Assembly (NCBI RefSeq): GCF_006345805.1 | Contig: NC_043001.1 | Span: forward strand, 59,830,001-59,894,000 | Length of the DNA: 64,000 nt | From: Octopus sinensis | Lineage: Eukaryota | Direction of reading: 5' to 3' | Shown here: one piece after another, positions 10,963-63,200 of the stretch | Numbering within the stretch: the stretch's first letter is position 1 | Layout: each line of letters begins with the position of its first letter | Translations under genes and position numbers: made by a program | The notes under the pieces: generated by a model | Seen by the model: the letters and a program-made list of their open reading frames with translations, nothing else | Told to the model about the DNA's origin: nothing | Databases searched by the model: none

Positions 10963-11057
10963 TTGAAATGGATAAATGAATTATCTTGTTACGGTGTAGA
11001 AAATAATAAAAGGAATTCTGTAGAATCTTCGTTCAGCTCCATTTCTTCCTTCACTAA

Positions 11058-11058
<1 letters not shown>
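10963..11058 (+). repeat. Truncated member of the hammerhead-bearing family seen at 38170-38603, embedded in (TA)n
   Basis: 10963-10994 matches about 38172-38203, and 10995-11058 matches about 38534-38598. (TA)n on both sides. Confidence 0.85.
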
Positions 11059-11131
<73 letters not shown>

Positions 11132-38317: not shown

Positions 38318-38594
38318 TATATATTTAGTGTAGGAAGAAATGGAGCTGAACGAAGATTTAACAAAATCCATTTTATTATTTTCTACATATGTTTCAAAAG
38401 CTGCAAAGTCCCTAATTCGGATTGAATAAGGAGTCCATTTTGCAGCCTTCTCTTCAGAAAAATCCAGGAACTTAATTCTCCAACAAAATGCACAGCAAGC
38501 TTTTCGCCAAACGCTCACGAGGAGCCAAACATATGTAGAAAATAATAAAAAGGAATTTTGTTAAATCTTCGTTCAGCTCCATTTCTTCCTACAC

Positions 38595-38603
<9 letters not shown>
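38318..38603. repeat. Short foldback element: ~77-bp inverted arms (38318-38394, 38527-38603) around a 132-bp spacer
   Basis: Arms differ by about one substitution and one indel. The right arm runs into (TA)n. Confidence 0.9.
38378..38463 (-). ncRNA. Type I hammerhead ribozyme, apparently intact
   Basis: Minus strand: helix I ATTTTT/GAAAAT, core CTGAAGA, 12-bp helix II GAAGGCTGCAAA/TTTGCAGCTTTT with a long loop, GAAA, palindromic helix III ACATATGT, GUA triplet. Predicted cut between 38384 and 38383. Confidence 0.8.
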
Positions 38604-38666
<63 letters not shown>

Positions 38667-38865: not shown

Positions 38866-39393
38866 CCTAGGGATTGATTGATCACTGCTACAATCGATTT
38901 TCCGACGTTTTTTTTTTTCATTTTTCCCTTTCTTCCTTCTTCCTTTTTGCCCTTTTTACTTTTTCTTTCCCCTGAAATGTTACTGCACTGGTCTCAAGAA
39001 GATCCTGCCGGAATTCCTCGTAAGAAGTGCGTGAGGGCGGCCATGTCTCACGCTCGTGTGATTTGGCACATCCGTAGCGCTGCTTCTACGTTTCCTCTTT
39101 TCTTTCCTTCTTCCCTTTTCCCATCTTAAGGGAAGGAGAAGGAAAAAAAGTGGAAACTGCACGTATAATACATAACTTAGAACACTTAGAAGAAGAGCTA
39201 CGAATGTGCCAGCACACACGAGCCTGAGATATGGCCGCCCTCACGCACTTCTCACGAGGAATTCCGGAAGGGGCTTCGTGCAACCAGTGCAGAGAACTTC
39301 CGGGGAAAGAAAAAGGAAAACAAAGGAAGAAGGAAGAAAGGCGAAAAAATCCGTTGGAAAATCGATTGTAACAGTGATCGATCAATCCCTAGG

Positions 39394-39435
39394 GATATCT
39401 TAAGGAGGAATTTTTATATTCCGAAATATAATATC
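39394..39435 (+). ncRNA. Minimal type I hammerhead, right-arm copy (core mutated, stems and triplet intact)
   Basis: GATAT-CTTAAGG-A-GGAAT-TTTTAT-ATTCC-GAAA-TATA-ATATC. Confidence 0.6.
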
Positions 39436-39935
39436 AGACTAAGGATGATTAAATTACACTAGTTATTATAGTCCATTTTTGTTATTATAGTACATTGCTG
39501 TGCTATTCAAATCACATTATTACTATTTGTTATTATTGTTTAAAAACAATACACAATGCTTCAAGCGAACTACCTACAATACTCTTCTATTTCTACGCCT
39601 GGGTCAGGCCGCGTCCGCAACCAGTAGGGAGGTGATCAAACTATTAAATAAAACGTGCTAAAATCGGATAAGCAACATAATTCTTAACACCATCAGGAAC
39701 ATACAAGTACAATGTGCTTCCACAACCTTACCCTTCGACGATCACTGAAATATATACCTACGTTGGTCATCATAAAAATCATATAACATTTACAGCACCA
39801 ATGACATGAGCACATACGCAAATTCCCCGAAATAATATGCAACGTCACATCAGCCATTGAGCATACATACCGAAGAACAACCGCAGTTATTGACCGATGT
39901 TACCACCACTGCGTTGACCAAGAGAAGAAACGCCC

Positions 39936-42900
39936 GTTAGCATTAATTTCTCTATTTGTGTGTATTGGCATATCCCAGAGTATCGTTGCTTTCTCGTTTT
40001 CTGTGACCTTTTCTGGTGTGTGCCTATACCCTCTTTTTTCATGCATAGTAGTGCAATTTTCTGTATGTTATATGTATTTGTAAGTCCTGGTGTTTTTGTT
40101 ATGTATTTGTCTGAATATTTTTTATCATGCCTAATGCGCTTACTATGATAAAAATTGTTTCTGTTTTTAGATTCCACATTCGAGTTACTTCTATTTCCAA
40201 GTCTTTGTATTTTGAAATTCTCCATTTCTTTTAGAGACACGTTGTCATCTGCTGGTATTGATATGTCAATTAGAAAGCATTTTTTTCTTCATGATCTCTG
40301 ACAACTTTATCTGGCCTGTTGGCATTAATTTCTCTATCTGTGTGTATTGGCATATCTTAGAGTATGGTTGCTTTCTCGTTTTCTGTGACCTTTTTCTGGT
40401 GTGTGCCTATACACTCTTTTTTCTCTTGTTATTCCATAATGTCATAGCTTACAGTGTATGTCATTATTTTTCTTGTTTTCCTGTCTATTTTGGTTAGTTC
40501 ATTTAGTGTCCAGTTAAGAATATTGTAACTGTAACCTATAACTGGGACAGCTAAGGTGTTAATATCTATTATCTTGTTTTTAGCATTGAGCTCTGTTTTT
40601 AGTATTGATCTTACTCGTCTATAGTATTCTTTCTTTATTTTCTCTTTCATTTGTGTGTTGTATCTTATCTAGTTCATGGATTTCTAAACATTTGTAAGTT
40701 TGGCTTTGGTCTAATTCTCTTATTCCATTGGCTTTATCTAGTGTGATGTTGCTACTCTTAACTAGTTTTCCTCTTTTCATGGTTACTTTGGCGCATTTTT
40801 CTAATCCAAATTTCATAACTATTTCTTTGGTAAATCCATGAACTGTCTGTAGTAGTTTTTCCAGCTGTTTGTCATTTGTAGCGTATAGTTTTAGGTCATC
40901 CATATATAAAAGTTGGCTGATTGTATTGCCATAACATTTGTATCCGCATTTAGCATATCAGATAGAGGTGACAGTGCCAAGCGGAAAAAGATTGGAGAGA
41001 GCGTGTCACCATGGAATATTCCTCTTCTACTGGGGATGGTTTTGGTTTTCACGAATCCCTCTTTTGTTTGGAGCTGTAGCACTGTTTGCCATTTATTCAT
41101 AGTGTCCTATGTAATTTATAATTGTTGATGCTACCTTGTTAATGGGTAGTGTTTCGAGGATCCACGTGTGGGGAATGCTATCAAACGCCTTTCAATAGTC
41201 GATCCAGGCCATACTGAAGTCTTTCTTCTTTCTGCGGCTGTCTTCAGTTATCGCCTTATTGATCATTAGTTGATCTTTACAGTCATATGAGCCCTTGCAG
41301 CAACTTTTCTGCTCTTTTGGAAACAGGTTGTTTTCGTCCAGGTGCTTGTTCAATCTTTGCGATATTACTGCAGTAAAGGCTTTGTACACTGTAGGGAGAC
41401 AGGTAATAGGTCTGTAGATTTGTGGTTTTGCCGTTTCATTGGTTTGGGAGTGAAGATAGTTTCCCCTTTCTTGAGCCATTCAGGCACTGTCTCTGGCTCT
41501 GCCAGTATGTCGTTAAATTTCTAGCCAGCTTTTACTGCATTTCTGTCAGATATGTCAACCAGAAGTTGGGGATCTTGTCGTACCCAGGTCCCTTCCAGTT
41601 GCTTAGTCTTTGCAGTGCCTGGGTGACCTCTTCAGTTGTTATGGGGTCCAGAGTTGCTCAGGTGCTAAGTTTGTTGTTTTAATAGTCCTTTTCTCTGGTT
41701 GTTCATTCACCGACCACATTTCTTTCCAGAATTCTTCTGCCGTTGGTGCTGCAGTGATGTCTATTTTATTTTTCCCAAGTTCTTGGTAGAACTTTTTGGG
41801 GTTGGAGTTGAACTATTTGTTTTGCTCAAAGAAACGTTGCCGCTTCTCATACCGGCGCATCTTTTGTGCTTTGGCAAGGATATCTTGCTTTAGCTTTTCT
41901 TTTATCTCAGGTAAATTTTCTCTGTGATGTTGTATTTGCACAGTATTTTTATTTTCTTTTTGTTGCTTAGTAGCGTTGATTGTGTATTAATTTCGTTAAG
42001 AATCGATAGATCTTTTCTAATGTTTTGTATTGGGGGGGGGGGGTATTTATGGTGGTACTCCTGTTTGGATGGGTTTGAGGGAGTATCCAGCTTCTTTTGT
42101 TGCGGCAGTGGCTGCTGCATATATTATGTCATTTAGCTCAGTGATATTGCTATTTCTTTCAGTGACTACAAGTTCCCTGACGGCCAGGTTTATGCTATTA
42201 TCATTGATGTTGTTTTGTTGTCTATTTTGATTTTTGGGACGTATAGTCGGTGGTCCATTCTGATATCTGTGGTTTTCAGTTCTTTGATTATTCTAGTTTT
42301 TATAGTATCTTAATCATTAGGTTCCTCTTCGTTGTTTCCAGGTTTTAGATCTGTTTCACTTTCTTTCTCATTCGTATGTTTGTCTGTAATATTTTGGTTT
42401 GATGCTTTTTGTACATTATTTTGCATCCCTACGGTCTGGAATTTTTGTTTTTTGTCTTCGTGTTTTACTATCTCAGTGCTTTTATTATTTGGCATTGTTG
42501 TGTGGCTTCTATCTACATTTTCCTGATGTATTTTTCCTTTTAAATGTTCTATTTCTATTTCTGATATTTTTTTGCGTTGTGAATATATCTTCGTATGTTA
42601 GCTATTTTATTAGGGTTCATTGTTGTATCGAAGTGTTTATGTTGGTTATTTTTCTTCCAGATTTTAGAAGTATATGTTGAGGTGTTTTCGTTCTGTGGGT
42701 AGAGCACTGCTGTAAAGTAAGCGTGTAGGATTGAAATATATTCCTCACGTGTCCATTTATGGCTTTTTGCTTTTATTTGCGGGACATGAAGAATAACATC
42801 CGGCCCTTTATTTTGACGGTCGTCATTTTCGTAGGGTAACGGTTCGTTCATTTCTGTTGTCACATTATTTTGCACGTGTAGTTTTTCGTACTTTTTATGT

Positions 42901-46039: not shown

Positions 46040-46071
<32 letters not shown>

Positions 46072-46073
<2 letters not shown>

Positions 46074-46470
46074 TAAATATCAGGGTAGCAAAAAAATTCT
46101 AGAAAAAATTCTCCGCTATCAGCGGTCTAGTGAGAAAGAAAGAAATAAGTCAAAGACTATATAATATACACTCAACAATATAGGAATGGCCCTGATAGGC
46201 CATTCGACTCACTAGAAAGAGCAGCCAAACTCAAACTGCTAAATAGTTGTAATTCTGAAATTGGAAGAGAAATAAAAACATTTACCCTTTTTCATCTCTG
46301 GACTATGCAAAGTTTCGACAAACTTAGGTAAACAAATTAATTAAATTAAATTAAATTTGCTTACAACTGGCGTGTCTCATCAGCAGAGAAGCCTAGGACG
46401 AGAATATGTCCACGAGGCTACAGCAAGGAAGCCTCAAGCCAATATGCTCTAAATTTTCAAGTAGATTACG
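46072..46470 (-). mobile_element. ~400-bp non-coding hammerhead-bearing unit, same family as 55787-56480, 3' end at (TA)n
   Basis: Collinear with the 55787-56480 unit (AGGCCATT..CACTAGAA, AAAAACATTTACCCT, CTCATCAG, CACGAGGC, AAATTTTCAA) and shares the terminal stem-loop region. Confidence 0.8.
46295..46389 (-). ncRNA. Type I hammerhead ribozyme, apparently intact
   Basis: Helix I TCTCTG/CAGAGA, core CTGATGA, helix II GAC/GTC with an inner 11-bp stem GTAAGCAAATT/AATTTGTTTAC, GAAA, near-palindromic helix III ACTTTGCATAGT, GUC triplet. Predicted cut between 46301 and 46300. Confidence 0.85.
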
Positions 46471-47463
46471 GATAATGACTACAAAATATAGTTGTTTTAC
46501 ATGAAAGCGAAATTTCCTGTCAGAAACAGCCACATAAATAGTGTATGCAAATTGAAGGAAGACGTTGGAACTTCCCTCTGGAAGTTTATTTTATTCAACA
46601 GCAAGTGGTGCTATTGTTTTGAGAGAAGTATGACTGGTACATTCAAAAATGGCAATATAATACCTACTTTAAACATACAGTTAAAGGAATGTATTTACTA
46701 CGTAATTACAGTGTCCGACCATTCTGAAATTGACTTCAGGTAACGAAAAGAAGACATAAAGAGTTTGACTTCAGTTCACGAATATTGCTTTTAATCTTTA
46801 ACAGTTTACTGTGAAAAGATTTCGCGTTCGAAATATCATAATGGATGGGTAAAATAAGCATCCTTAAAGTGAAACAACGCATTGGTAAGTAAACAAAAGT
46901 ATCAAGAAATAGAAGAGAGGAAAGGGAACATCACCTTTCAAGTAACTCAGAATAGGTAAAGGCAAGCTCGCCAAAGTTTAATGCAGATTAAATATGGAGA
47001 TTAAGATTGTATGGTATTCGATTTTCATCGCAAATAATGTTCCTAGTCAATTTAATCGCTGTGGTAGATGGAGAGGCGAAATAAATAGACAAAATCCTTT
47101 TACTTTTAATAATATTTTCTAGCCAAGTGATAATACAGAAGTCCAAAATATAAATAATTAATAAATAAGATGTGAAAACCACTAAAACATATGTTCTCTA
47201 ATGCCAATATATGAACATATAGATTTAAAAAGTACTGAAGGCCCTACATACAAAAAAGCTATGTACATACAACGAATTAGATAAAACAAACCGTGTGAAC
47301 CACATTTTTTCCGGTTTATCCATTTACGTGGTTTATCCATTTAGTGTGTGACCATCCTTGGGACATAAATAATGTTTATGTAAAATTTGGTGAAAATCGG
47401 AGAATTGTGGAAATGTACGCGTTAATCAATATCATACACATATTGTGATGTATATATACTAGA
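46470..47463 (-). mobile_element. Second copy of the ~1-kb repeat at 15470-16630, Helitron-like 5' end
   Basis: Collinear similarity with 15470-16630. The minus strand starts A|TCTAGTATATATAC at 47464/47463. Confidence 0.6.
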
Positions 47464-47806
47464 TTACCTTACTTAGATTGCCTTTTCCATATGTTGATAT
47501 TACTGTAAATCTTTTGTGAAACAAAAATGGAATGACGATTATTGAGTGAAATTTACAAAAATATTATCGTCATGAATATGGTGCTTCTGAAATAAAATAC
47601 TGATATTTCGATAATTTGACGATGCCAGCAAGAATATATCTTACGTTATCCGACTTTTTGAAATCGTCAGGTAAACTTCAAATATTGCACGAAGGTTCAA
47701 ATGGTAGTTACATTATCGATTTCGAAAAGAAGAAAAGCAAAGTGGAATTTGAACTCAGAACGTGAACATGGAGGAAATGGCGTTAAACGTTTTGCTCAGC
47801 GTGTTA

Positions 47807-49068
47807 CGAGGGGCGTTCAATAGGTAATGCCCCTGACCCACTTGCAGTTGTTTGATGATCTAGCTGAAATTTTGCATGTGCACTTATTTATACCTCTATA
47901 GATTAAATGGTGAATTTCAGCTCTGAACTAATTGTGGTTTCTGATTTACAGGTGTTTGAACTGAGTCAAGTGTGAAATGGAGCCTGTTGAGTGTCGAGCA
48001 GTGGATCCGGTTTTTGTATTTGAAAGGACGCACACCACGGGAGACTTTTGATGAAATGAAAGTAACTTATGGTGATGATGCCCCATCATATGACCTTGTA
48101 AAACGCTGGCATTGTGAATTCAAACATAGTCGGAACTCTGTAGAAACAGCTCCCAGATCTGGTCGCCCCCTTCTGCCGTCGATGAGACGTCTGTCCGTCA
48201 AGTTGAGGCTGCCATTTTGGAAGGTCAACGCATAACTATTCGCCAAATAGCCCTTGAGGTCAAGATTAATACCGGGTCTGTGGAAACTATCATTCATGAC
48301 CATTTGCATATGCAAAAGGTGTCTGCTAGATGGATTTCCAGGTTGCTCACACCCTTCCCGAAGCAAGAACGCGTCGAGTGCTCAAGGATGAATTTGGAGA
48401 TGTGCCAAGAAGATGAGTCAAAAGTTTTCAAAAGACTGATCACACAGGATAAAACCTGGGTCCATCACGATGATCCATAGACCAAAGCCCAGTCAATGCA
48501 GTGAAAGCACCGTGACTCACCTCATCCAAAGAAGGCAAGGGTGCAGCCCTCCGCTAACAAGGTTATGCTCACGGTCTTCTGGGACCAAGACAGAGTAGTG
48601 ATGACAGATGTCCTGGCAAAGGGTACCACAATTACAGGAGCCTATTATGCTTCACTTTTGAGGAAATTAAGAGAAGCTATCAAAATCAAGAGGCGGGGCA
48701 AGATCAGCAAAGGCATCCTCCTCCTGCAGGACAACGCTCCGGTCCACAACTCGCGTGTCGCCAGATCAGAAGCACAGGTGTACAGCTATGAACTCCTCCC
48801 CTTGCACCCTCTGATTTTCATCTCTTCCCAGCCATGAAGTTGATTTTGAAAGGAAAGCGTTTCCTAGATGATGCAGCCTTGATTTCTGAAGTCACGTCGT
48901 GGTTGGAGGACCAAGCTGGGGTCTTCTACAAAAACGGTCTCAAACGATGGGAGAAATGCATAATTCTGGGTAGTTCCTATGTAGGAAAAGACTAATAACT
49001 GTGCCAAGTGTCGTTGCTCTACTGCTATGGGAAGTGGGTCAGGGGCATTACTTATTGAACGCCCCTCG
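47807..49068 (+). mobile_element. Mariner family A, copy 1 (1262 bp), defective transposase
   Basis: 37-bp TIRs at 47807-47843 and 49032-49068 with 1 mismatch; TA at 47805-47806 and 49069-49070. Transposase broken by a frameshift near 48170, stops, and a deletion in the YSPDLAP region. Inserted in a SINE family B copy. Confidence 0.97.
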
Positions 49069-49294
49069 TAACAATTCTGCCATTTCGCCGTCTTACTTAA
49101 ACATCGCAGAAGAAGTGGAGTTAGTACAAAATATCTACGAATCCAAATAACAATAGCGAAATGTAATTTACACATATTACGAACATTTAAACATTAATTA
49201 AAGCTACAGCTGATACATACATACGTAAATGCATACAAACACACACATATATATCTATAACTATACATACATACATATATATATATATATACAT

Positions 49295-49352
<58 letters not shown>

Positions 49353-49463
49353 GGACTGCTGAATTTAGGGAAAAGAAATTACAAAAGAATCAGTGTTAAT
49401 TATTTTAATCATCATGTTCCCTTCTCAGGTTAAAGAGAGAAAGATATAGAGAGAGAGAGAGGG

Positions 49464-49530
<67 letters not shown>

Positions 49531-49785
49531 ATGTGCAGAAATTAAATGAAATGGAAAAATACCTAGCTAGTTCGACATTCCTATGATAGCACTAAAATAC
49601 TGATATAGGCAATGGATGAACTGTCCAAAACAAAATAAATCCGAAAATGTAGTGTGTAGATAAAGCTTGTGTTGTTTCTCCCAGCATTAATATCATCTTA
49701 GCGATAACATCTTAACTGTTATATATCTAGTTCCCACCATCGGAATTATAGAAAAATGTACAAACAATATTTTCAATACAATACT

Positions 49786-49830
<45 letters not shown>

Positions 49831-49842
49831 ATTATATATATA

Positions 49843-49892
<50 letters not shown>

Positions 49893-50906
49893 TATATATA
49901 TATCAAAAGGATGTTATAATACTATTCCACATATATGAAAAATGTCAAACAAGAATCCAATATACCTCCATCATCGGCTGCCCCAGAGATATCATTATGG
50001 TTTTGTTACCTAGGCAGTACCATTCAATCCGGCGGTGTCAACAAACATACCAAGGAAACCAAAACTCTCAAACACGTTTACCCTATATACAACCGTATCG
50101 GTAAATAAATTCAATAAGTAAATTACAACCAACTAATAAATGCGTTATTAAACAACGACTTATCCTTTAAGTCATACAAGAAGTAAATTTCCTAACGCCT
50201 TCCGTAGTATAATATAAAAATGGAAGCTTAATTTTAAGTTTATTCAATCAATCAATGTATAGGCAGTATTAAGCACTTACTTTAATAAAACTACTAAGAA
50301 ACACATAAACTAAAGTACATCGTATCGGTATTAATAATAAACCTGCAATAACTAAATTATATGCTAAATCGCAACCAATCTTTAATTCCATACAAATAAT
50401 AATCCCACAAGTTTTCCACAGGTACTACTATAATTAAAAAAATTTAAAGCGTTATATATATCTCCCCAAAACAAAACAAACCCGATTGAATTTAATTTAA
50501 CTAAAAATATAATAATTATGAGTGAAATACATTATTTCATCATTCAAATGTTAATAATAAAACAGTACATACTTATTAACATATCACAACTACAAGCTAT
50601 AATATTAAATTACCAATAATTAATAGAAACATTAAATTCTATTAAATAGGAACTAATAAAAGTACTTGCAATTAACTATTATTATAAAACCTTGCTATGT
50701 TTAACGTTAATTAAAACTGCTTATAAGATTAAAAAACTACAGGTATTAACACATGTTTTATCAGACATGCGGTACTATCACCAAGAATTTAAAAGGACTA
50801 TCTTAACTATTGATAACGAAGTGTATAATTACTATTTCCTCAGTACTCTCAGATAATGTTGGTGATGTAGTAAGCAAATAACTCGAATCATAAACATTCT
50901 AAATCC

Positions 50907-51620
50907 TTACATACAATTGATCAGTTGAAGACAATATATTACCCCATATTTACTTAAAATTACAATTTTCCCACCTACACAGCGATTAAAAGTTTTAACC
51001 AACTTACCATATTTATACTCTTGTTTTACTAAATCTCTTAACAGTTTATTTATTCTTTCCAAACATTTATTAGCATTATTGATAATAGTACTATATCTAA
51101 CAAGTTGCCCTGCAAAAACACCATAACCAATAAAGAAAAAGGAATTCTACTACTGATTCATGGCATTGAAGCCACTTGGAAACTAAAATATGTTTTATTG
51201 TAAATGTCATTACATATTTCATTATTATCCTTGATTACTAGATTGACATCTAAATAATTAATATTTCGTATATTGTTGCCATTTCTGGTGGCTATAAGCT
51301 CACAAGGGTATATTTTTCTGAGTAAAATTTCAAAGAAACCATAATTAGGTATAAATATATCATCTATGTATTCATTAAGCTGCTTAAGTAAATGCTTCTT
51401 TTTCCTGGTACAAAGGTATTTAAGAAAAAGTAGCTCACATGACGAAAGATAAAGGTCCACCAATAAGGGGCTACAATTGCTACCCATTGGAATTCCTCTA
51501 ATCTGCTCAAACACCTTACCCGCAAACATTACAAACGAATTATTTATAATAAAACTAACCATTTCTTACATCTTTCTTTTACTTGTATTAGTATATCCCT
51601 TATAATAGCAATTTGACAAA
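50907..51620 (-). mobile_element. Penelope-like RT C-terminal half, probably Naiad-type (RT at the C-terminus)
   Basis: FIINNSFVMFAGKVFEQIRGIPMGSNCSPLLVDLYL, YIDDIF and INYLDV, then after a stop and frameshift GYGVFAGQLVRYS...LSKYGV ending at TAA 50907-50909. No GIY-YIG is visible downstream. Confidence 0.75.
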
Positions 51621-53934
51621 AAAGGTTCACCATTCTTAAATTGTGGTTTCTTTGGTATCTTTGTCCCCAAACAACAGCTAATGATGGATGTATGTCTTTC
51701 TTACCCTCGCTCGTTTTGCATATAAGATCGTCTTTAAAAATTGCACGTGATTAATATAATTATACATCTAATTTTGTGGAATATGCAGACGCATTTCTTC
51801 CTCATTTCAAAAATAATTTTACGTACGTACATTCACTTATAAAACGCACATTTGATCATGCAAACACGATTATATCTTTGTAAGCAACGTTAACACACAC
51901 AAACACACACACACACACGTTTGTATGTTTGTGTGTGTGAAAAAGAAAGAAAAAAAGGAAGAAATGAGAATATTCAATAATGTAAGTAGAATATCAATAT
52001 TGGTAACTCTGAGTTATTCGGATAGTCAGACAAGCCCAGTGCAATGAATGTAAAAGTACTCAAAATAAGTACTCAGCAAATGAAAACGTAACGCAAGTAT
52101 CTGATTGGCTGCGTAAGCAAAGATAACTTCGGATGAATGAATTTGATTGCACTTGCTCCATGAAGAAGAAATAGATTAATAAATAACGTTGTAATTAATT
52201 CAGTTAAGTGTTATACATCTAATGCATTCGTAGAATGCCGCTGACGTTAGGATTCTACAATGTCAAAGAATGACTAGAAAGAAAAGCCGCTGAAAAAAGA
52301 TAATCAGATTAAGCGAAGAAAAGGTTAACCTAAAGCCTTTTTCAAATTTAATTTTCATTCACAAGGCTATGTATGATAACAAAAGAGGGCTTCATCGTGG
52401 AACAAACGAAATATTTAGACTTAAAACTTACAGGAAAAATAGAATTATCAGAAACTTCTGTGCATTATCTGTATTTATGTGTTTATTTTATAAATCTACG
52501 TACGAATGTTCTTAGTTTTTTTAAAAACATATTCAAAATGTCATAAAGTGAATTCAAGTTGTTGTCATACCGCAGTGATATTAATATATATTCTATTAAG
52601 CAAAGATGATACTTCATATTTCTAGAATTCCCATCCTTCTGTATGCAAGCTAGGCTCAACCATTTTTTATTGAGCAAGTAAAATTTTCTGTTAATCCGGT
52701 ATGGGAATTCGGTTGTAGACAGATCAATAACGATACACACACAAAATAATATATATGTATTGGGTGTCTAAGTGAGTTAATGCATATGTATGTACGAAGC
52801 AGTACAAAGTCAGTTCACACTAGCATGAGCGATGTGGCAGCATTAAATTTTCGACGACAAGTCACATTGATCATCGCATTTAAAAGGGAAAAAAGGCGGT
52901 CTCTAGTTTAGTCTCAACATATCTATCAGTTTTTAGCATAATGACTGTTTTCGCTTTAATTCTTTCATTCGTAAAAAAACCCATTAAATTGCAAATAACC
53001 ATTTGGTTTCATTAAAGCATAAGAGTGAGGCAAACTTGGGTTGAGAATGTTGCACAGCTTTAGAGATTTGAATACTTTCCGTTGATACACACCTTTTTGC
53101 ATGTTCACTCATTGCTTTTTAAGTCTGAGTTTGATTTACTGTTAAAGAAATACAGTGGGAGGAAACATGTCAGCTCAATAGAGAATCTGTTACCTCAAAC
53201 ACATTACAGTCACATACAGATTACGAAACACATATTCCACTTTATTTCTTTAGTGTTTTCTTATGTAATTTTTTCATTCGTCTATGTACACATGTCATGT
53301 ATGAATGTGTATATGTGTACACATATTTAGAATGCGTGTGCATTCCCGCACATATATTTAGTACACTCACGCAAAGCATTTCGAAGCATACGGTCAATAT
53401 GAATGTAAGTATTTTATTTTTGATACCCAACTTTTATTTTTGATACCCAAAAGTCTATTGAATATTAAAAATTTCCCCCAATAGATTGTGTGAAACAACA
53501 TATCAAAATGATATCTAAGTGACATCACCAGGGTACTAGACTTGGTATTTCTGAGTGAATTTGTCTTTTTTCGTGGCAGATATCACTACAAGTATTTGAA
53601 GCGGGCCCAAAATTTTGTTCCTAATTATATAAAGTCTGCAAAGATTAATTTCCTAATGTATGCTGAGACATGCTAAACTGGAATTAATTGAGTGCAAGCA
53701 CACGAGCAAGGACATTCTATTTAAAAATGCGTACATTCATACTTAACACACTGATGTGCACTAGAACGGCGTGAAGTATTAGCTGAGGGACACTGTCACA
53801 GAGAAAGGTTTCACTCTAAAGATTTTGCACGAACTGGGCTCCAGGTTAATTCATCAAATTATCAGATAATATTTCAGTGTCGTATAAGGAAGCATAGATA
53901 TATTTCTTGGTTTGTGAATAAATTTTGTAATGCG

Positions 53935-55065
53935 GTAGACACCTGGAACTCGCTTTCTGAGATAATCAGCAGCTGCATCGTCGCATTTGATGTTTTGGAA
54001 AGAGGGAAGAGTCACAAGGAGCAATATCTGGTGAATGCAGTGGCTGTAGGACCTGGTGAATGATGTGTCTAGCCAAAAACTTCTGCATAAGCTGCGCTGA
54101 ATTGGCATGTGCGTTGTCATGGTGCAACTGCCACTTACCGGACGCATGCAATTGTGGCTTTTCCCGACGAAGAGCATCCCTAAAACACCGCAAAACGTCC
54201 CGGTAGTACTCTTTGTTTACTGTCTGATCAGGTGGAGTATACGCTTAATGAACAATCCCCTTGTAGTCGAAGAGAATTGTCAATAGTGTCTTCACATTGC
54301 TTCGACCCATTTGTGCTTTCTTCGGTTCAAAAGAGTTTGTGGTCTTCTACTGCGAAAAAAAAGTGAGCCTTTGTTTCGAGGTCATAGACATACACCCACG
54401 CTTCATCATCCGTTATGACTGTTTTCAAAAGTTTTCATCGTTCTAGACATATTGAAGATCTTGTGCAACTGAAATTCGAGTGTCTTTTCGGTCAGCTGAA
54501 AACAGTTTTGGCACAAACTTGGCAAGCACGCGTCTCATACCCAAATTTTCAGTTACAATGGACTGGGCTGAACAGTAACTAATCTGCACATCCTCTGATA
54601 ACTAACGGATGGTGAATCCACGACTTCTCCTCATAGCTGCACGCACATCTGCGTTGATTTTCTCAGTTCTGTTGGTTGCGAGTCTCCTAAAATGTTCTTC
54701 ACTATCGACATTTTTTCGGCCATCTGGAAACGCCTGAACCACTCGTACACTTGTTTGCGGCTCATATACTCCTCACCATACGCTTTCTGCAACTCAGCGT
54801 AGGCCTCTGAAAAGGTGACGTCAGGATTTTGGCAAAATTGTCTGCAAATTCTCTGCTCAACTTCCCCTGTAATGATCATGCGACGATCACACGCTACACA
54901 CGTTCCTTCCAAGCACTGCAGTAAACAGCAGCAGTGAGCTAGAATGTTAAAACTTAGCGCGCATGCACAGCAGAATTCAATGTCAATCTGTAACAAGCGG
55001 CTTTATTCTACACATTTATCTTCGTTACTATAGCAAAAGTACAGATACTTATTGATAAGACTACG
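53935..55065 (-). mobile_element. Mariner family B, 3'-truncated, frameshifted
   Basis: One TIR-like end (minus strand TA|CGTAGTCTTATCAATAAGTATCTG at 55065). Motifs VEQRICRQFC..AYGEEYMSRKQVYEWFRRF, WQLHHDNAHAN and HSPDIAPCDSSLFPK. Second TIR not found. Confidence 0.85.
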
Positions 55066-55087
55066 TATGCATATATATATATATGTA

Positions 55088-55174
<87 letters not shown>

Positions 55175-55236
55175 TCATGGTATATTGTGTCAAGAACGTA
55201 GTAGAGTACAGTATAAAGCTCATCCATCTTCAATTA

Positions 55237-55268
<32 letters not shown>

Positions 55269-55723
55269 CAAAGGTAAACAGAAGTATGAATGTGAATGTG
55301 TGAGTATTCCTTACACTTCAAAGAGTACGAATAATTACAATTAATGCATATTTTAATTGGTTTTCATTGTAGATTTATAAAATATTCAGAGCGTTTAGTT
55401 AACTGATCCAATTATCCTTATTGGAAAATCCTCGCAAAGATATTGACGTCAAGAACAAATTTTCTCCATTAATACTTTCCTATGACATATTTTTCGTTTC
55501 AAAGTAAATAAGCTATTTAGTGTGATGTAGGAATAGTATTTATGGTGTGAGGTAGGGCGATGAGTAAATCTGTAGCATCTCTTTCACTGAAACTCTAGAT
55601 TCCGTAGGTTGCAATAGTCAATTAACACACTAAGAAAGAACGTTAACGATGAAATATTCATAAAGAAATAATAATGTTAAAACTTACACATATTTATACA
55701 TGTATACATACATACGTACGCCT

Positions 55724-55791
<68 letters not shown>

Positions 55792-55908
55792 AATCAAGGA
55801 ACGGCCATAATAGGCCATTCACCCACTAGAAATAACAGCCAAAGATTCAACCGCAAATAAACATCAATTCCGTAAACCAGGAGAAAATTAAAAAACATTT
55901 ACCCTGTA

Positions 55909-56015
55909 ATTTCTTATACGATGCACCGTTTCATCTACTGTTTAATGGTAAACCAACCTGATTAAATTAAATCAAGCCAATCTTCCATAGGCCCTTAGAT
56001 TCATCAGTAAGAAAT
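55909..56015 (-). ncRNA. Type I hammerhead ribozyme (mirror copy in left arm)
   Basis: Exact reverse complement of 56160-56266. Confidence 0.85.
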
Positions 56016-56159
56016 AGCCAAGCCGGAACAGATATTTTCACGAGGCATTTCCGACCCTGCCTCGGCAATATCTGACCTAAAATTTTCAAATCACCGCACT
56101 CGCGCCAAATTTATCGGCAGCAAATAAATATCTGTGAAAATATCTGTTCCGGCTTGGCT

Positions 56160-56266
56160 ATTTCTTACTGATGAATCTAAGGGCCTATGGAAGATTGGCT
56201 TGATTTAATTTAATCAGGTTGGTTTACCATTAAACAGTAGATGAAACGGTGCATCGTATAAGAAAT
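56160..56266 (+). ncRNA. Type I hammerhead ribozyme, apparently intact
   Basis: Perfect 8-bp helix I ATTTCTTA/TAAGAAAT, core CTGATGA at 56168-56174, helix II ATCTA/TAGAT with a long inner stem, GAAA at 56243-56246, near-palindromic helix III ACGGTGCATCGT, GUA triplet. Predicted cut after 56258. Confidence 0.87.
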
Positions 56267-56496
56267 TACAGGGTAAATGTTTTTTAATTTTCTCCTGGTT
56301 TACGGAATTGATGTTTATTTGCGGTTGAAGCTTTGGCTGTTATTTCTAGTGGGTTAATGGCCTATTATGGCCGTTCCTTGATTGTGATGTTGGGCTTAAA
56401 AATGGTCTATGACTATTTAATTTTTTCCCACTAGGCCGCTGGTGGCAAAAAAATTCTACAAAATTTTTTGCCACCCTATATTGATTAAATAAATAT

Positions 56497-56536
<40 letters not shown>

Positions 56537-57046
56537 CTTGTGTGTGTGTGTGTATATATAGATATATATATATATATATGTTTACAGATATATATCTGTA
56601 ATGATTATTTTACTCCCCTACGACAAAACTACGAATCTTTTTTTCAGCAGTACTATTTGGTGACTCGCGTAGAAAAAATTCTGGAGGGAAATACGAATTC
56701 ACTTGTCTATATAAATGTGGACATGCTGATTAACTTTTATATTTTTCGATGTCAATTGATCGAAAATATAGGAGGTAAGTTTTCCTAGCATTTCTAGATT
56801 TATAGGAATATTATGTCGATAAAGGAAATGGGTATTATGATTCTAATCCAGAAACGTACGTCCATAATTAACCGAAGACTGTGTGATTTCATTATTTTTC
56901 TTCCTTTTTTGCCATATGTGAGTTACAAATATTGTTGTTCGTGGAGACTTATTTTTGTGGTAAAAGGAAATAGTAGTCTTTTGGCTGCTATTTCTAATAT
57001 TTTTTGGTATGTGGTTGAGCAACTTGTTGCAAAATACACTTATTAT

Positions 57047-58944: not shown

Positions 58945-59645
58945 AGACTGAAACGAACCAATTGGTTTTCGCGTTAGCTATTCATCGTTTGAACAATACC
59001 GGTTAGAAAACGGTGTTAGGTCTAATAGTTCATGAGAAAAGAGATTATATATATAGTTTTGGATAATATGTATAAGGGAGGTAAGTAGTTCAGGAATTAG
59101 AAATGTGAGTGATGTAGAAAGTGTATAGGGTTTAGTGGGTTAAATTGAAGAGTTAGTGGTGTTCTGTATTGAGTTGTGTGTTCACATTTAGTTGGGGAGG
59201 AATTTGTTGATGAAAAATTACTCTTTATTCAACCTTTGTTGCATTGTGGTGTTCTGTGAGCATTGGTAAAAGGGAAATATTTGGAAATTGGGATTAAGAT
59301 TCCTGGCACATATTTTTATGTGTTCACTCACCTTTAACTGTCTGTATTGTGGGTGGCGGATTTGCTCTTTGTGAATGGTGATTCTTTGACGGAGCGAAAT
59401 TCCTGTTTGTCCAATATAGAATTTACCGCATCCTGTGCATGTCATGACATAGATTACATTTGCCAAGGCGCATGTGAAATTTGATTTGATCTTAAATATT
59501 TCTCCTTGTTTGAATTGGAATTCTGAGCCCTCCAGAAGGTGGGGGCATGTTCCTCAGTTGGAACGTCCATATTTTGTCACTTTTGGTTCACTAGTTAGTG
59601 GGTAAAGTCTAGCGCTGGTTAGTATTCTTTTCAGTGACTTCGGTT
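58945..59645 (-). mobile_element. 5'-truncated canonical Penelope-like element: linker, GIY-YIG endonuclease, 3' region with decayed hammerhead
   Basis: QPKSLKRILTSARL..KYGRSN*GTCPHLLEG..FTCALANVIYVMTCTGCGKFYIGQTGISLRQRITIHK..SEH. The left end (3') abuts (TACA)n/(CA)n and the right end lies close to (TA)n. Confidence 0.88.
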
Positions 59646-59693
59646 GCTTTTAACTTTTTATAATTTATATGAGCTTAAAATTTCGTTCATATA

Positions 59694-59777
<84 letters not shown>

Positions 59778-60185
59778 TTTTCTTATGAAAAATATAGAAC
59801 TACTTAAGAAGTGCTGGGGTCGAACCCAAGACAAAAATTAAGATTTAAGATATAAACTCAAATTAGGCAACCATATTCATAGTTATAAATTCGACTTTAA
59901 CACGCACATCGAACTCTATGGGTCTTTTAACTAAAACTCTTAAAAACACTTAATTTTATTACAAAAAATTCTCTTCTCTTTTTCTCCCACTTCCTTCCAT
60001 ACGTATCACACATTGGTTTTATTTACATGTATTTTTATGTATATTTGTATTTTATAAATATTTTTTTAAATATTCATGTTTCCATATCTATTAATATATA
60101 TTTTCGCATTTTAAGTAGAAAGTTATAACTGTATGAGTATGATTGCTAAATCTGAGTTTATATCTTAATTCTTATAATATATATA

Positions 60186-60249
<64 letters not shown>

Positions 60250-60255
<6 letters not shown>

Positions 60256-63200
60256 AATGAATTTCTGTTTGTTTGCTTGCTTGTCTGTCGAAATGGAAGT
60301 AAAATCAGCATATGTGTAGGTGTAGTCTCACCCTAGTTCAGATTCGAAAATGTCTGTCAAAGTGAAAACAATGACTGCAAATGTATAGGAGTAGTGTCAC
60401 TGTGGTTCAGATTCAACATTGAATCTTTCTATTCTCTTGGGCATACGGCGTATCAAGTTAAATAATACCAATTAGGGCTATATAAGTAGTAATGACGCCT
60501 TCTGGCATGTATTTGGATTCCTAATCGATGAACGGCACCCAGCCATTCAACAACTGTGCATTTAGAAAATTGTCGAAGTGTTTACTTCACTGCTTAGAGA
60601 GCAGCAATCAAGTTTCAAATCCAATGGATCCTACTTTAGCAGCCTTGTTCAATACTTGTCGGGGTGGGGGAGCAATTTTGTAAAACCGCTGCTATATCAC
60701 TAGTTGCCTTCTCATTACACATAGAGTAATATTAAATGGAATGGACGCAAAATAGGCACAAAGGTTCAGGGTCATTTTAGGATTAAGTTTAGTACGACAA
60801 TTGGTAGAGTATATACTTTACATCCTAACGAAAATGAATGCTTTCATCTCAGAATGCTTCTTCGTGTAAAAAGAGGACCAACTTCTTGGAAAGGTTGAAA
60901 GAAGTTGATGGTGAGATTTGCAGAACATATTGAGAAGCGTGTTTGAAGTTGTTTGCTTTCAAATGATCAGCAATAGGAAGTAACCATTGAAGAATATTCA
61001 ATATCAAAAGTGCCAAAGTTTTAAGAGGTCTTTTTGCTATTATTCTCAAAAATTGTGAAATAAGTAATTCTGTTGAACTGTGGAATAAATTCAGAAATGA
61101 TCTTGCTGAAGATTTTAGGCACCAAGTTCGGTTGCGTAATTATGAGCCATGTTATTGCTTTCACTGATTCTATATACAATGCAGCTTTGATTGAAATAGA
61201 TCAAATTATTTCGATGAGAGGTGAACCTGTAGAAAATTTAGGTCTCCTACTAACTAATAGAGGGGATCTTAACAGTCTGTCCACTGAAATAATGAGGGAA
61301 ATTTCCTGATATGAAGGAACTGATCATGTACATAAATGATAATCTTGCCAAACTTCTACCTGATCAACGTATACAAATTTCACAGTCATATAAAAAATGT
61401 TAACATTAACAAATAAGGACTTTACTTTTCAGACGCTCCAGCAGGTAATTGTAATTAAACAATCCAAGAAAAACAATAGCTTTAATCACTGATAATTCTG
61501 GGATTACAGCAACATAACTACCCAGAGGTCGGACTGCCCATCGAACATTCAAGTTATCTTTAGATTTATCTAACAAAGCAAATCCAGTTTATAATATATG
61601 TAAAATTCTGGAATGGATGAACTAATACGAAGATGTCTGGGAGGAATGTACCATAACCCACAAAAATCCTTTTAAAACCGTGGACAAAACGTTACGAGAC
61701 ACTAGACATTTAAATTTCATGATGGGAAATGACACAATATTATTGTTATCAGACTTCCGACAAACACTACTAGTTGTTCCGAGACGAACAAAAGTGGACA
61801 AGCTCAATGCTTCAATAAAGTCTTCTGTATTATGGTACCATGTCAAAACAATTCAACTTTCAACAAATATGTGATTGCAGCTTTCAAGAAATCAATCAGC
61901 TGAACTATTTGCAGAGCAGCTTTTGAAACTCAGTGAAGAGGGAGTTGCAAATGATGAAGAACAATTTCTGTTCAATATGCAATCCAGTTTATTCCGTTGA
62001 TGATGTGGTGGCTGAAAGCTTTCTGAATCTTCTTCGTAATTACAACAATGCAGATTGAATCTGTCAACGAGCTATCCTTGCTCCAAAAGATGTTGATGTA
62101 AATATGCTATTGGATAATTTTTTGGGAGAAGTATTCCTTTATAACTCAATTGACAGTGTTTTTGATGATCAGGATATTGTTAACAACCCCTTCGAATTTT
62201 TTAATTCGCTAGGACCACCAAGTACAACTCCTCATTGTCTTCCGCTGAAAAAAGGGACTCCTACGAGGGGCGTTCAATAAGTAATGCCCCTGACCCACTT
62301 CCCATAGTAGTAGAGCAACGAAACTTGGCACAGTTATTAGGCGTTTTATACACAGGAACCATCCAGAGTTACGCATTTCTCCCTTTATTTGATGCAGCTC
62401 TGGAGACCGTTTTTGTAGAAGACCCCAGCTTGGTCCTCCAACCACGACGTGACTTCAGAAATCAAGGCTGCATCATCTGGGAAACTCTTTCCTTTCAAAA
62501 ACAACTTCATGACTGGGAAGAGGTGAAAATTAAAGGGTGCAAGGTCAGGAAAGTAGGGGCGATGGGGGAGGAGTTCATAGCCATACGCCTGTGCTTCTGA
62601 TCTGGCGACAAGCGAGTTGTGGACTGGAGCGTTGTCCTGCAGGAGGAGCATGCCTTTGATGATCTTGCCCCGCCTCTTGATTTTGATAGCTTCTCTTAAT
62701 TTCCTCAAAAGTGAAGCATAATAGGCTCCTGTAATTGTGGTACCCTTTGCCAGGAAATCTGTCATCACTACTCCGTCCTGGTCCCAGAAGACTGTGAGCA
62801 TGACCTTGCCAGCGGAAGGCTGCACCCTTGCCTTCTTTGGAGGGGGTGAGTCACGGTGCTTCCACTGCATTGACTGAGCTTTGGTCTCTGGATCATCGTG
62901 ATGGACCCAGGTTTCATCCTGTGTAATCAGTCTTTTGAACAATTTAGACTCATCTTCTTTGCACATCTCCAAATTCACCCTCGAGTACTCGACGCGTTCT
63001 TGCTTCTGGAATCGGTGTGAGCAACCTGGGAATCCATCTGGCAGACACCTTTTGCATATGCAAATGGTCATGAATGATAGTTTCTACAGACCCGGTATTA
63101 ATCTTGACCTCATGGGCTATTTGGAAAATAGTTATGTGTCGATCTTCCAAAATGGCAGCCTCAACTTGACGGACAGATGCCTCATCAATGGCAGAAAGAG

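What the first reader, a model, noticed from the sequence alone, without database searches (positions are those of the whole stretch)
46295..56266. Hammerhead ribozyme family with compensatory changes in all three helices
The copies at 46295-46389 and 56160-56266 are homologous but diverged. Both keep CUGAUGA and GAAAC while the paired regions differ and still pair. Helix I is TCTCTG/CAGAGA versus ATTTCTTA/TAAGAAAT, the helix II base is GAC/GTC versus ATCTA/TAGAT, and helix III is ACTTTGCATAGT versus ACGGTGCATCGT. The triplet is GUC versus GUA. Covariation of this kind indicates selection on RNA structure. Both have an unusually long (about 57-68 nt) AU-rich helix II extension and a self-complementary helix III that could permit dimeric cleavage.
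Basis: partly seen in the sequence, partly recalled or inferred. Interest (0 to 1): 0.9.

Follow-up and report, generated by a model that had tools for sequence, protein, structure and literature searches.

The report
Octopus hammerhead ribozymes in short retroelements
The flagged sequences match self-cleaving hammerhead ribozymes, carried by short mobile-element copies in the Octopus sinensis genome; this is a known kind of element, here with an unusually long second helix that makes standard detection models miss it.

Summary
Both sites have a complete type I hammerhead core with three helices, and 8 of the 13 junction base pairs differ on both sides yet stay paired. A strict descriptor finds 4 hits in the window, against 0.02 expected by chance.

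The window is Octopus sinensis chromosome CM016863.1. The ribozymes are not free-standing. Each lies in a 210–420-nt non-coding unit whose copies share their 3′ end, are truncated to different extents at the 5′ end, and abut (TA)n in 5 of 6 cases. Two of four loci also carry an inverted 5′-truncated partner. These are hallmarks of Penelope-like element (PLE) retrotransposition, and decayed PLE RT and GIY-YIG remnants lie nearby.

Best reading: dimer-type hammerheads of PLE-dependent, retrozyme-like elements. This is a known kind. The departure is a conserved 15–18-bp hairpin inserted in helix II, which drops them below Rfam thresholds. Cleavage activity and the autonomous partner element remain untested.

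The parts
46295..46389 (-). Hammerhead A. Type I, fully canonical core, G10.1–C11.1, GUC cleavage triplet. The predicted 3′ product starts at 46300.
   Evidence: RF00163 full-length alignment at 19.2 bits. Active-junction fold is 0.9 kcal/mol above the MFE.
46042..46460 (-). Unit A, about 420 nt: 5′ hairpin (46435→46414), hammerhead, 3′ hairpin (46205→46184), then a (TA)n tail (46080→46042).
   Evidence: Homology to B and C beyond the ribozyme. The 5′ boundary comes from the paralogous flank at 15459+, which lacks the unit. Tail sequence.
55909..56015 (-). The predicted 3′ product starts at 55916.
55787..56090 (-). Unit C. It has the complete 5′ end, including the 5′ hairpin at 56063→56042. 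It lacks the last ~130 nt of the unit and runs into (TA)n at 55786.
56091..56133 (.). 43-nt filler of unknown origin between the 5′ end of unit C and the truncated 5′ end of inverted unit B. It is comparable in length to the 30–40-bp 'tail' extension described at PLE insertions.
   Evidence: Literature.
56160..56266 (+). Hammerhead B. Type I, canonical core except A10.1–U11.1, GUA triplet. The predicted 3′ product starts at 56259.
   Evidence: Its only Rfam match is RF00008 at 13 bits. Sense MFE −27.7 versus antisense −16.4 kcal/mol.
56134..56547 (+). Unit B. It is truncated by ~48 nt at the 5′ end, has the complete 3′ end with a (TA)n tail, and is inverted head-to-head against unit C.
38378..38463 (-). 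Hammerhead D, from a second family. Core CUGAAGA, 12-bp helix II with 55 nt between the core halves, palindromic helix III ACAUAUGU, GUA triplet, G10.1·U11.1. The predicted 3′ product starts at 38383.
   Evidence: RF00163 full-length alignment at 16.2 bits. Fold.
38318..38526 (-). Unit D, about 210 nt.
38527..38604 (+). Inverted copy of the last 78 nt of unit D, placed directly against the unit's 5′ end. Its outer end abuts (TA)n.
   Evidence: Arms are 97% identical.
10995..11064 (+). D-family copy reduced to the last ~70 nt of the unit, followed by (TA)n.
   Evidence: 91% identical to unit D positions 140–209.
59221..59553 (-). Context: a decayed PLE-type GIY-YIG endonuclease remnant with cysteines inside the core. 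No link to units A–D has been shown.
   Evidence: Pfam PF01541 at 28.5 bits against a cutoff of 22.6. No homologues retrievable.
50910..51750 (-). Context: a decayed RT remnant of a Naiad-type PLE, lying between units C and A on the same strand. No link to the units has been shown.
   Evidence: Weak RVT_1 match. The closest full-length relatives have an N-terminal GIY-YIG domain and a C-terminal RT.

Best explanation
The sites are type I hammerhead ribozymes of the dimer-dependent animal kind. Each is built into a short (210–420 nt), non-coding, AT-rich retroelement of Octopus sinensis. The window holds two sequence families: A/B/C and D.

Proposed mechanism:
1. The unit is transcribed.
2. Helices I and II and the long helix II hairpin fold within one RNA. 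Helix III, which is 3 bp closed by a 6-nt loop, is too weak on its own.
3. Two ribozyme copies pair through their self-complementary 12-nt helix III segment to form a double hammerhead. The two copies could come from tandem units or from separate transcripts.
4. The RNA cleaves after GUC or GUA.
5. The units are copied back into the genome by a reverse transcriptase and GIY-YIG nuclease of a Penelope-like element (PLE). This machinery nicks (TA)n and primes from the unit's 3′ end. That would explain copies that are 3′-anchored, 5′-truncated, sometimes paired with an inverted truncated partner, and next to (TA)n.

Shown here: the motif, its excess over chance, compensatory substitutions, strand asymmetry, the predicted dimer, 3′ anchoring, (TA)n association, inverted partners, and PLE remnants in the neighbourhood.

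Inferred: actual cleavage, mobilisation by a PLE, and the purpose of the cleavage. Full-length copies keep 65–70 nt upstream of the ribozyme, so the template that was copied was not the cleaved 3′ product.
For: - Motif and chance: 4 descriptor hits against 0.02 expected. RF00163 aligns over its full model length to A and D.
- Covariation: 8 of 13 junction pairs have compensatory changes, 26 of 26 cells are paired, and slid controls are far lower. The helix II hairpin keeps the same UAAUUU loop on a diverged stem.
- Strand specificity: sense versus antisense MFE is −27.7/−16.4 (B), −20.6/−17.9 (A) and −22.6/−17.8 (D) kcal/mol. The active fold of B contains 6 G·U pairs.
- Dimer: the helix III 12-mer folds as a hairpin at 0 and −0.2 kcal/mol but self-pairs at −8.1 and −17.5. 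Homodimer cofolding gains −7.7, −13.5 and −5.4 kcal/mol with an intermolecular helix III.
- Mobile-element context: homology extends about 70 nt upstream and about 250 nt downstream of the ribozyme.
- 3′-anchored copies of different 5′ extent.
- Inverted 5′-truncated partners at two loci.
- 5 of 6 unit 3′ ends lie within 30 nt of (TA)≥6, against a 4% chance expectation per oriented site; the binomial tail is 6e-7 if the six ends are treated as independent, which they are not fully, because they come from four loci.
- GIY-YIG and RT remnants of PLEs lie in the window.
- Literature: animal type I hammerheads have a short helix III with a palindromic loop and act as dimers, and PLE pLTRs carry hammerheads. 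PLE insertions show 5′ truncation, an inverted truncated copy, a 30–40-bp tail and (TA)n bias. Animal retrozymes derive from PLE pLTRs and occur as monomers as well as tandems. PLEs are annotated in Octopus vulgaris.
Against: - No Rfam family reaches its gathering score.
- B and C have A10.1–U11.1, and D has G10.1·U11.1, where G10.1–C11.1 is highly conserved. These copies may therefore cleave poorly.
- Only two independent sequences underlie the covariation for the A/B/C family.
- No tandem copies occur in the window, so a cis dimer or circRNA route is not available at these loci.
- The units show no sequence similarity to the non-coding DNA around either PLE remnant in the window.
- The Naiad-type relatives of the RT remnant have no hammerhead.
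- No autonomous partner element was identified.
- No target-site duplications could be read because the flanks are microsatellite.
- No further copies could be fetched from outside the window.
Confidence: 0.7

Rival explanations
1. Dead relics. The motifs are real hammerhead descendants, but these particular copies are decayed, non-cleaving fossils of an extinct element family with no present activity or function.
For: A differs from B by 22%, and the PLE coding remnants nearby are heavily decayed. B and C carry A10.1–U11.1 and D carries G10.1·U11.1. Craig et al. report some PLE clades as old remnants in cephalopods.
Against: All core positions are intact in all four copies, and every junction pair is still paired. 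B and C are identical at 253 of 255 positions, with no change in the ribozyme. That suggests a recent insertion, unless gene conversion between the arms has homogenised them.
Confidence: 0.3
2. One old PLE spans the reader's interval. On the minus strand, C would be the upstream pLTR, the RT remnant at 51750→50910 the ORF, A the downstream pLTR, and B the inverted truncated copy at the 5′ end.
For: C, the RT remnant and A have the same orientation and the right order, and B abuts C head-to-head exactly as in the published PLE scheme. Two mariner insertions account for part of the excess length.
Against: A and C are only about 72–78% identical, while B and C are 99% identical. The pLTRs of a single insertion should be equally old. 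The RT is of the Naiad type, and four Naiad relatives have no hammerhead in their non-coding ends. About 2 kb of unexplained DNA lies between the predicted ORF end and A, and (TA)n tracts separate C from the ORF region.
Confidence: 0.08
3. The units are miniature inverted-repeat DNA transposons (Tc1/mariner-type MITEs inserting at TA) that happen to carry a hammerhead-like sequence.
For: The B/C and D loci are inverted repeats flanked by TA-rich DNA. Tc1/mariner transposases are abundant in the window.
Against: The arms are grossly unequal, at 78 versus 209 nt for D and 414 versus 304 nt for B/C, and they are copies of the unit's 3′ part rather than short termini. Unit A has no terminal inverted repeat. 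The D-family copy at 10995–11064 is a bare 3′ fragment. This pattern fits reverse transcription from the 3′ end.
Confidence: 0.07
4. The B/C locus acts as a long hairpin RNA (small-RNA precursor) and not as a ribozyme.
For: It is a 255-bp, 99% inverted repeat with a 92-nt loop. A sub-threshold Rfam match to a plant miRNA precursor model (48.7 bits against a gathering score of 83) reflects the hairpin shape.
Against: The match is far below threshold and is to a plant family. A and D have the ribozyme without such a hairpin, or with a different one. The inverted repeat is explained by the insertion mechanism. This function would be a by-product and would not explain the conserved core or the covariation.
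Confidence: 0.1
5. Chance resemblance to the hammerhead consensus in AT-rich repetitive DNA.
For: There is no Rfam hit at gathering score, and the surroundings are low-complexity.
Against: 0.02 hits are expected against 4 observed. The copies are homologous and carry 8 compensatory pair changes. The full-length Rfam alignment is penalised mainly for one insert.
Confidence: 0.01

Closest known systems
Animal type I hammerheads of satellite, SINE-like or non-LTR retrozyme repeats (newt satellite 2, Schistosoma Smα, coral, mussel and axolotl retrozymes; Cervera & de la Peña 2020, PMC7229834)
   Same: Type I topology and a helix I of 6–8 bp. Helix III is weak, with a palindromic loop, which implies dimeric action. 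The host unit is short (150–450 bp), low-GC and non-coding. Solo monomers are known as well as tandems.
   Different: Helix II is not 4 bp plus a small loop. It is a 4–5-bp base, an internal loop, and a conserved 15–18-bp hairpin, giving 55–68 nt between the core halves. The canonical loop 1–loop 2 contacts are not recognisable. There is no tandem array in the window. Helix III here is 3 bp plus a 6-nt loop, a 12-nt self-complementary block that is longer than the 1–2 bp plus 2–4-nt loops described.
Hammerheads in the pseudo-LTRs of Penelope-like elements (Cervera & de la Peña 2014, PMC4209133; Craig et al. 2021, PMC8557442)
   Same: The ribozyme sits in a terminal non-coding module of a retroelement. 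Helix II is larger than usual and helix III is palindromic. Sequences vary extremely within a genome and are full of compensatory changes. The insertion architecture matches: 5′ truncation, an inverted truncated copy, a short extra 'tail' and (TA)n targets.
   Different: No RT/EN ORF is attached to these units. [quoted passage not shown] Homology of the units to an octopus PLE terminus has not been shown.
Rfam RF00163 Hammerhead_1
   Same: The full model (positions 1–45) aligns to A and D, with all core positions and three helices.
   Different: The scores of 19.2 and 16.2 bits are below the gathering score of 34. B and C are not matched by this model at all.

Membership tests
Hammerhead ribozyme, type I | Conserved core C3-U4-G5-A6-N7-G8-A9 … G12-A13-A14 with A15.1–U16.1 and H17 (not G) | tested here: met
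   All four copies meet this: CUGAUGA (A, B, C) or CUGAAGA (D), then GAA, A15.1–U16.1, and C17 or A17.
Hammerhead ribozyme, type I | Three helices around the core, with helix I open-ended and helices II and III closed | tested here: met
   Helix I is 6–8 bp and open. Helix II is closed by a long hairpin. Helix III is closed by a 4–6-nt loop.
Hammerhead ribozyme, type I | G10.1–C11.1 pair at the base of helix II (highly conserved) | tested here: inconclusive
   Met in A (G–C). B and C have A–U, and D has G·U. This pair is conserved but not absolutely required.
Hammerhead ribozyme, type I | Score at or above the Rfam RF00163 gathering threshold (34 bits) | tested here: not met
   No hit at gathering score. 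A scores 19.2 bits and D scores 16.2 bits on tight slices, and B has no RF00163 match. The shortfall for A and D is mostly the penalty for the 51–54-nt insert in helix II.
Hammerhead ribozyme, type I | Covariation supporting the helices | tested here: met
   8 of 13 junction pairs are changed on both sides with pairing kept, and slid controls give 0–3. Only two independent sequences are available.
Hammerhead ribozyme, type I | Site-specific self-cleavage | not testable with these tools
   This needs in vitro transcription or mapping of RNA ends.
Hammerhead ribozyme, type I | Tertiary contact between helix I and loop 2 | not tested
   The internal loop 4–5 bp up helix II is in the right place, but the canonical loop motifs were not compared.
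Animal non-LTR retrozyme | Type I hammerhead inside a short (150–450 bp), low-GC, non-coding repeat unit | tested here: met
   The units are 210–420 nt, lie in a 35.5% GC window, and contain no ORF longer than 42 aa.
Animal non-LTR retrozyme | Head-to-tail tandem arrangement, so that two cleavages release a monomer | tested here: not met
   The copies in the window are solo (A, the D-family fragment) or inverted pairs (B/C, D). No tandem is present. Solo monomers of retrozyme families are reported elsewhere. The genome-wide arrangement is unknown.
Animal non-LTR retrozyme | Expression as linear and circular RNA | not testable with these tools
   No transcriptome access.
PLE-derived non-autonomous element / pLTR | Insertion architecture: 3′-anchored with variable 5′ truncation and an inverted 5′-truncated copy at the 5′ end | tested here: met
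   B is inverted against C. D has a 78-nt inverted partner. The D-family fragment is 70 nt. The architecture is as described.
PLE-derived non-autonomous element / pLTR | (TA)n or other microsatellite target bias | tested here: met
   5 of 6 unit 3′ ends lie within 30 nt of (TA)≥6, against a 4% chance expectation per oriented site. The six ends come from four loci and are not fully independent.
PLE-derived non-autonomous element / pLTR | Sequence homology of the unit to the terminal region of an autonomous PLE in the same genome | tested here: inconclusive
   No similarity to DNA around the two decayed PLE remnants in the window. Four Naiad-type relatives lack hammerheads. Intact octopus PLEs could not be retrieved.
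MITE (Tc1/mariner-type) | Short symmetric terminal inverted repeats with a TA target duplication and constant element length | tested here: not met
   Unit A has no terminal inverted repeats. The inverted arms at B/C and D are unequal copies of the unit's 3′ part. A bare 3′ fragment also exists.

The most novel reading that the evidence does not exclude
Octopus genomes may harbour a lineage of (TA)n-targeting, PLE-dependent mini-retroelements that was active recently; arms B and C are identical at 253 of 255 positions. Their hammerheads have loop 2 replaced by a conserved 15–18-bp hairpin. This architecture escapes Rfam gathering thresholds and the usual descriptors, which cap the spacer between the core halves at about 17 nt. 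If so, hammerhead-bearing elements are under-counted in cephalopods and probably in other animals. The inserted hairpin would then have a function of its own, either as a surrogate tertiary contact or as a handle for the reverse transcriptase.
Probability: 0.3. Interest if true: 0.55.

Novelty: new variant of a known kind. Interest (0 to 1): 0.4.

Why it matters
Hammerheads in animal retroelements are well established, so this finding does not open a new category. It has three modest values.

1. No paper in the searchable literature describes hammerhead ribozymes in a cephalopod. The recent detailed Octopus vulgaris repeat annotation does not mention ribozymes.
2. The long helix II insert shows that curated models and common descriptors miss real family members. 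This matters for censuses of ribozymes and for statements that certain PLE clades "lack" hammerheads.
3. The window offers compact natural material for the still open question of what hammerheads do for PLE-type elements. It has two families, solo and inverted copies, a canonical variant and an A10.1–U11.1 variant. The full-length copies retain sequence upstream of the cleavage site.

Tried and rejected
1. Rfam at gathering score over the whole window gave nothing. A permissive scan of 11 kb was swamped by microsatellite-driven miRNA-model matches. Only tight slices exposed the sub-threshold hammerhead alignments.
2. I tried three ways to get more copies for a real covariation test.
   - A signature pattern scan of metagenome contigs gave 0 hits.
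   - The flanks of mariner homologues (L001–L003) contained no units.
   - Exact look-up of window ORFs returned only the window's own locus. This did identify the assembly, GCA_006345805.1, as Octopus sinensis.
   The units have no ORF longer than 42 aa, so a protein-based search for them was not possible.
3. Hypothesis: the long-helix-II hammerheads belong to Naiad-type PLEs. The RT remnant between C and A is Naiad-like. However, four full-length relatives (L005–L008) have pLTR-style partial tandems and no hammerhead core with helices in their non-coding ends. Rejected.
4. The GIY-YIG remnant gave no retrievable homologues. Its 3′ UTR holds only a degenerate hammerhead-like trace, and the relaxed scan found nothing there.
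5. MAFFT alignments of the ribozymes slip the 5′ strand by 3 columns. I therefore did not build a covariance model on them, and counted pairs in a hand-anchored register instead.
6. The paralogous site at 15.4 kb is not an empty insertion site. Only one flank is shared.
7. No target-site duplications could be read in the microsatellite flanks.

Full report
**What is there**

- Copy A (46389→46295, minus strand) reads UCUCUG-CUGAUGA-[60 nt]-GAA-ACUUUGCAUAGU-C-CAGAGA.
- Copy B (56160–56266, plus strand) reads AUUUCUUA-CUGAUGA-[68 nt]-GAA-ACGGUGCAUCGU-A-UAAGAAAU.

This is the type I hammerhead topology. Helix I is open, helices II and III are closed, and cleavage would follow GUC or GUA.

A scripted descriptor scan of both strands found two more hammerheads.

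- Copy C (56015→55909, minus) is identical to B.
- Copy D (38463→38378, minus) is unrelated in sequence. It has CUGAAGA, a 12-bp helix II with 55 nt between the core halves, and the palindromic helix III ACAUAUGU.

**More than chance**

The strict descriptor requires the core, helix I ≥5 bp, helix II ≥4 bp, helix III ≥2 bp, U16.1 and H17. It gives 4 hits in the window, against a mean of 0.02 (maximum 1) in 300 order-2 Markov simulations.

Rfam finds nothing at gathering score. On tight slices, the type I model RF00163 aligns over its full length to A (19.2 bits, E = 0.019) and to D (16.2 bits). Both are below the gathering score of 34, largely because of the 51–54-nt insert in helix II. B gets only a 13-bit match to RF00008.

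**Covariation**

A and B are homologous well beyond the ribozyme, at 78% identity over 314 aligned positions.

I counted pairs in a hand-anchored register, because MAFFT slips the 5′ strand.

- All 26 cells of the 13 junction-proximal pairs are paired.
- 8 pairs differ on both sides: 4 in helix I, 3 in helix II including 10.1–11.1, and 1 in helix III.
- Sliding the 3′ partner by ±1–3 positions gives 6–13 of 26 cells paired and 0–3 double changes.

The helix II extension is a conserved hairpin in both variants. It has the same UAAUUU apical loop on a 15–18-bp stem of diverged sequence. In B the stem is rich in G·U pairs.

The structure is strand-specific. Sense versus antisense MFE is −27.7/−16.4 (B), −20.6/−17.9 (A) and −22.6/−17.8 (D) kcal/mol. 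The catalytically competent junction fold lies only 0.9 (A) and 1.8 (B) kcal/mol above the MFE.

The caveat is that two independent sequences are a thin basis for covariation. I could not obtain more.

**Dimer reading**

The 12-nt helix III block does not fold stably on its own (0 and −0.2 kcal/mol). It self-pairs at −8.1 (A) and −17.5 (B) kcal/mol. Cofolding two copies yields the double hammerhead with an intermolecular helix III, gaining −7.7, −13.5 and −5.4 kcal/mol for A, B and D.

This is the architecture described for animal type I hammerheads: a short helix III, a palindromic loop, and activity as dimers.

**Context: organism**

An exact look-up of a Helitron ORF placed the window on GCA_006345805.1, chromosome CM016863.1, at about 59.82–59.88 Mb. 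That assembly is Octopus sinensis.

The window is 35.5% GC and full of microsatellites. It carries Helitron, Tc1/mariner and LINE remnants.

**Context: the ribozymes are parts of mobile units**

- Unit A spans 46460→46042. It comprises a 5′ hairpin, the hammerhead, a 3′ hairpin and a (TA)n tail. Both hairpins are conserved in the other copies. The 5′ hairpin differs by a compensatory change, GAGGCU/AGCCUC in A versus GAGGCA/UGCCUC in C.
- Unit B (56134→56547) lacks the first ~48 nt but has the complete 3′ end and tail.
- Unit C (56090→55787) has the complete 5′ end but runs into (TA)n about 130 nt early.
- B and C lie head-to-head. Their shared 255 nt are identical at 253 positions, and both mismatches fall outside the ribozyme. 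A 43-nt filler lies between C's 5′ end and B's truncation point.
- Unit D (38526→38318) is preceded by an inverted copy of its own last 78 nt.
- A third D-family copy at 10995–11064 consists only of the last ~70 nt plus (TA)n.

So the copies share their 3′ ends and differ in 5′ extent. Two of the four loci have an inverted 5′-truncated partner.

Five of six unit 3′ ends lie within 30 nt of (TA)≥6. The chance expectation is 4% per oriented site, and the binomial tail is 6e-7 if the six ends are treated as independent. They are not fully independent, because they come from four loci.

Craig et al. 2021 describe exactly these features for PLE insertions: 5′ truncation, an inverted 5′-truncated copy at the 5′ end, a 30–40-bp tail, and (TA)n bias. 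They place the hammerheads in the terminal repeats. A 2026 preprint argues that animal retrozymes are non-autonomous PLE derivatives and occur as monomers as well as tandems. PLEs are annotated in Octopus vulgaris.

**PLE remnants in the window**

- A GIY-YIG domain with cysteines inside the core lies at 59553→59221 (minus strand). It scores 28.5 bits in Pfam against a cutoff of 22.6.
- An RT remnant lies at about 51750→50910 (minus strand). Its closest full-length relatives have an N-terminal GIY-YIG domain and a C-terminal RT, which is the Naiad architecture.

Neither remnant is shown to be linked to the units. No sequence similarity was found. Four Naiad-type relatives fetched with their non-coding ends have no hammerhead, in agreement with Craig et al. 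The EN remnant had no retrievable homologues.

One layout was tempting: B inverted, C as upstream pLTR, the RT as ORF, and A as downstream pLTR, all one old element. It is disfavoured because A and C are only 72–78% identical while B and C are 99% identical.

**Mechanism and what remains open**

The most likely account is that these are dimer-type hammerheads belonging to short PLE-dependent retroelements of the retrozyme kind.

Cleavage itself is inferred. B, C and D depart from the conserved G10.1–C11.1 pair, so only A is fully canonical.

Full-length copies retain 65–70 nt upstream of the ribozyme. The reverse-transcribed template was therefore not the cleaved 3′ product. The role of cleavage is as unclear here as it is for PLEs in general.

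**Comparison with the known, and verdict**

This is a known kind of system. It differs in three ways.

- A conserved long hairpin is inserted where loop 2 normally sits. This explains the failure of the curated models.
- Helix III is a 12-nt self-complementary block, longer than usual.
- The organisation in this window is solo or inverted, with no tandem array.

A literature search found no paper describing hammerheads in octopus. I rate it a new variant of a known kind, of moderate interest.

Noticed in passing
It has CUGAAGA, a 12-bp helix II and the palindromic helix III ACAUAUGU. It sits in a ~210-nt unit preceded by an inverted copy of the unit's last 78 nt.
   Followed up: yes
10995-11064 (+): A D-family fragment consisting of only the last ~70 nt of the unit, followed by (TA)n. 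Homology begins 4 nt upstream of the predicted ribozyme cleavage site.
   Followed up: partly
59221-59553 (-) and 58945-58990 (-): A decayed PLE-type GIY-YIG endonuclease remnant. About 250 nt downstream, just before a microsatellite, lies a degenerate hammerhead-like trace: CGAUGA…GAAA followed by the perfect 10-nt palindrome ACCAAUUGGU.
   Followed up: partly
50910-51750 (-): A frameshifted RT remnant. Its nearest full-length relatives have an N-terminal GIY-YIG domain and a C-terminal RT (Naiad-type PLE). This fits reports that Naiads survive only as old remnants in cephalopods.
   Followed up: yes
55787-56388: The B/C inverted repeat would fold, if transcribed through, into a ~255-bp near-perfect hairpin with a 92-nt loop. 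That makes it a candidate hairpin-RNA or small-RNA source. It produced a sub-threshold Rfam match to a plant miRNA precursor model (48.7 bits against a gathering score of 83).
   Followed up: no
46414-46435 (-), 56042-56063 (-); 46184-46205 (-), ~55798-55820 (-), ~56356-56378 (+): Two further conserved hairpins in the A/B/C units. The first lies 5′ of the ribozyme and shows a compensatory change (GAGGCU/AGCCUC versus GAGGCA/UGCCUC). The second is a 3′ hairpin, GAAUGGCC…GGCC(A/G)UUC, which could be a recognition element for the reverse transcriptase.
   Followed up: partly
29092-33151 (+); 59600-63900 (+): A Helitron with long ORFs (Helitron_like_N and a helicase). A second, decayed Helitron copy is interrupted by a mariner at 62262-63558.
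   Followed up: partly
47805-49070 and 62262-63558: Two mariner copies, 90% identical, in inverted orientation. One of them lies between hammerhead units A and C. A further mariner remnant is at 53857-55002 (-), and a Tc1-like ORF is at 18843-19556 (+).
   Followed up: partly
15459-16609 and 46460-47464: A dispersed ~1-kb repeat, 81–85% identical in blocks. One end of it coincides with the 5′ boundary of unit A. The copy at 15 kb has no hammerhead unit next to it.
   Followed up: partly
38686-39573: A large imperfect palindrome, 79% self-complementary over ~900 nt, immediately next to the unit D locus.
   Followed up: no
41195-41479 (-): A LINE-type reverse transcriptase fragment (weak RVT_1 match), unrelated to the PLE remnants.
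   Followed up: no
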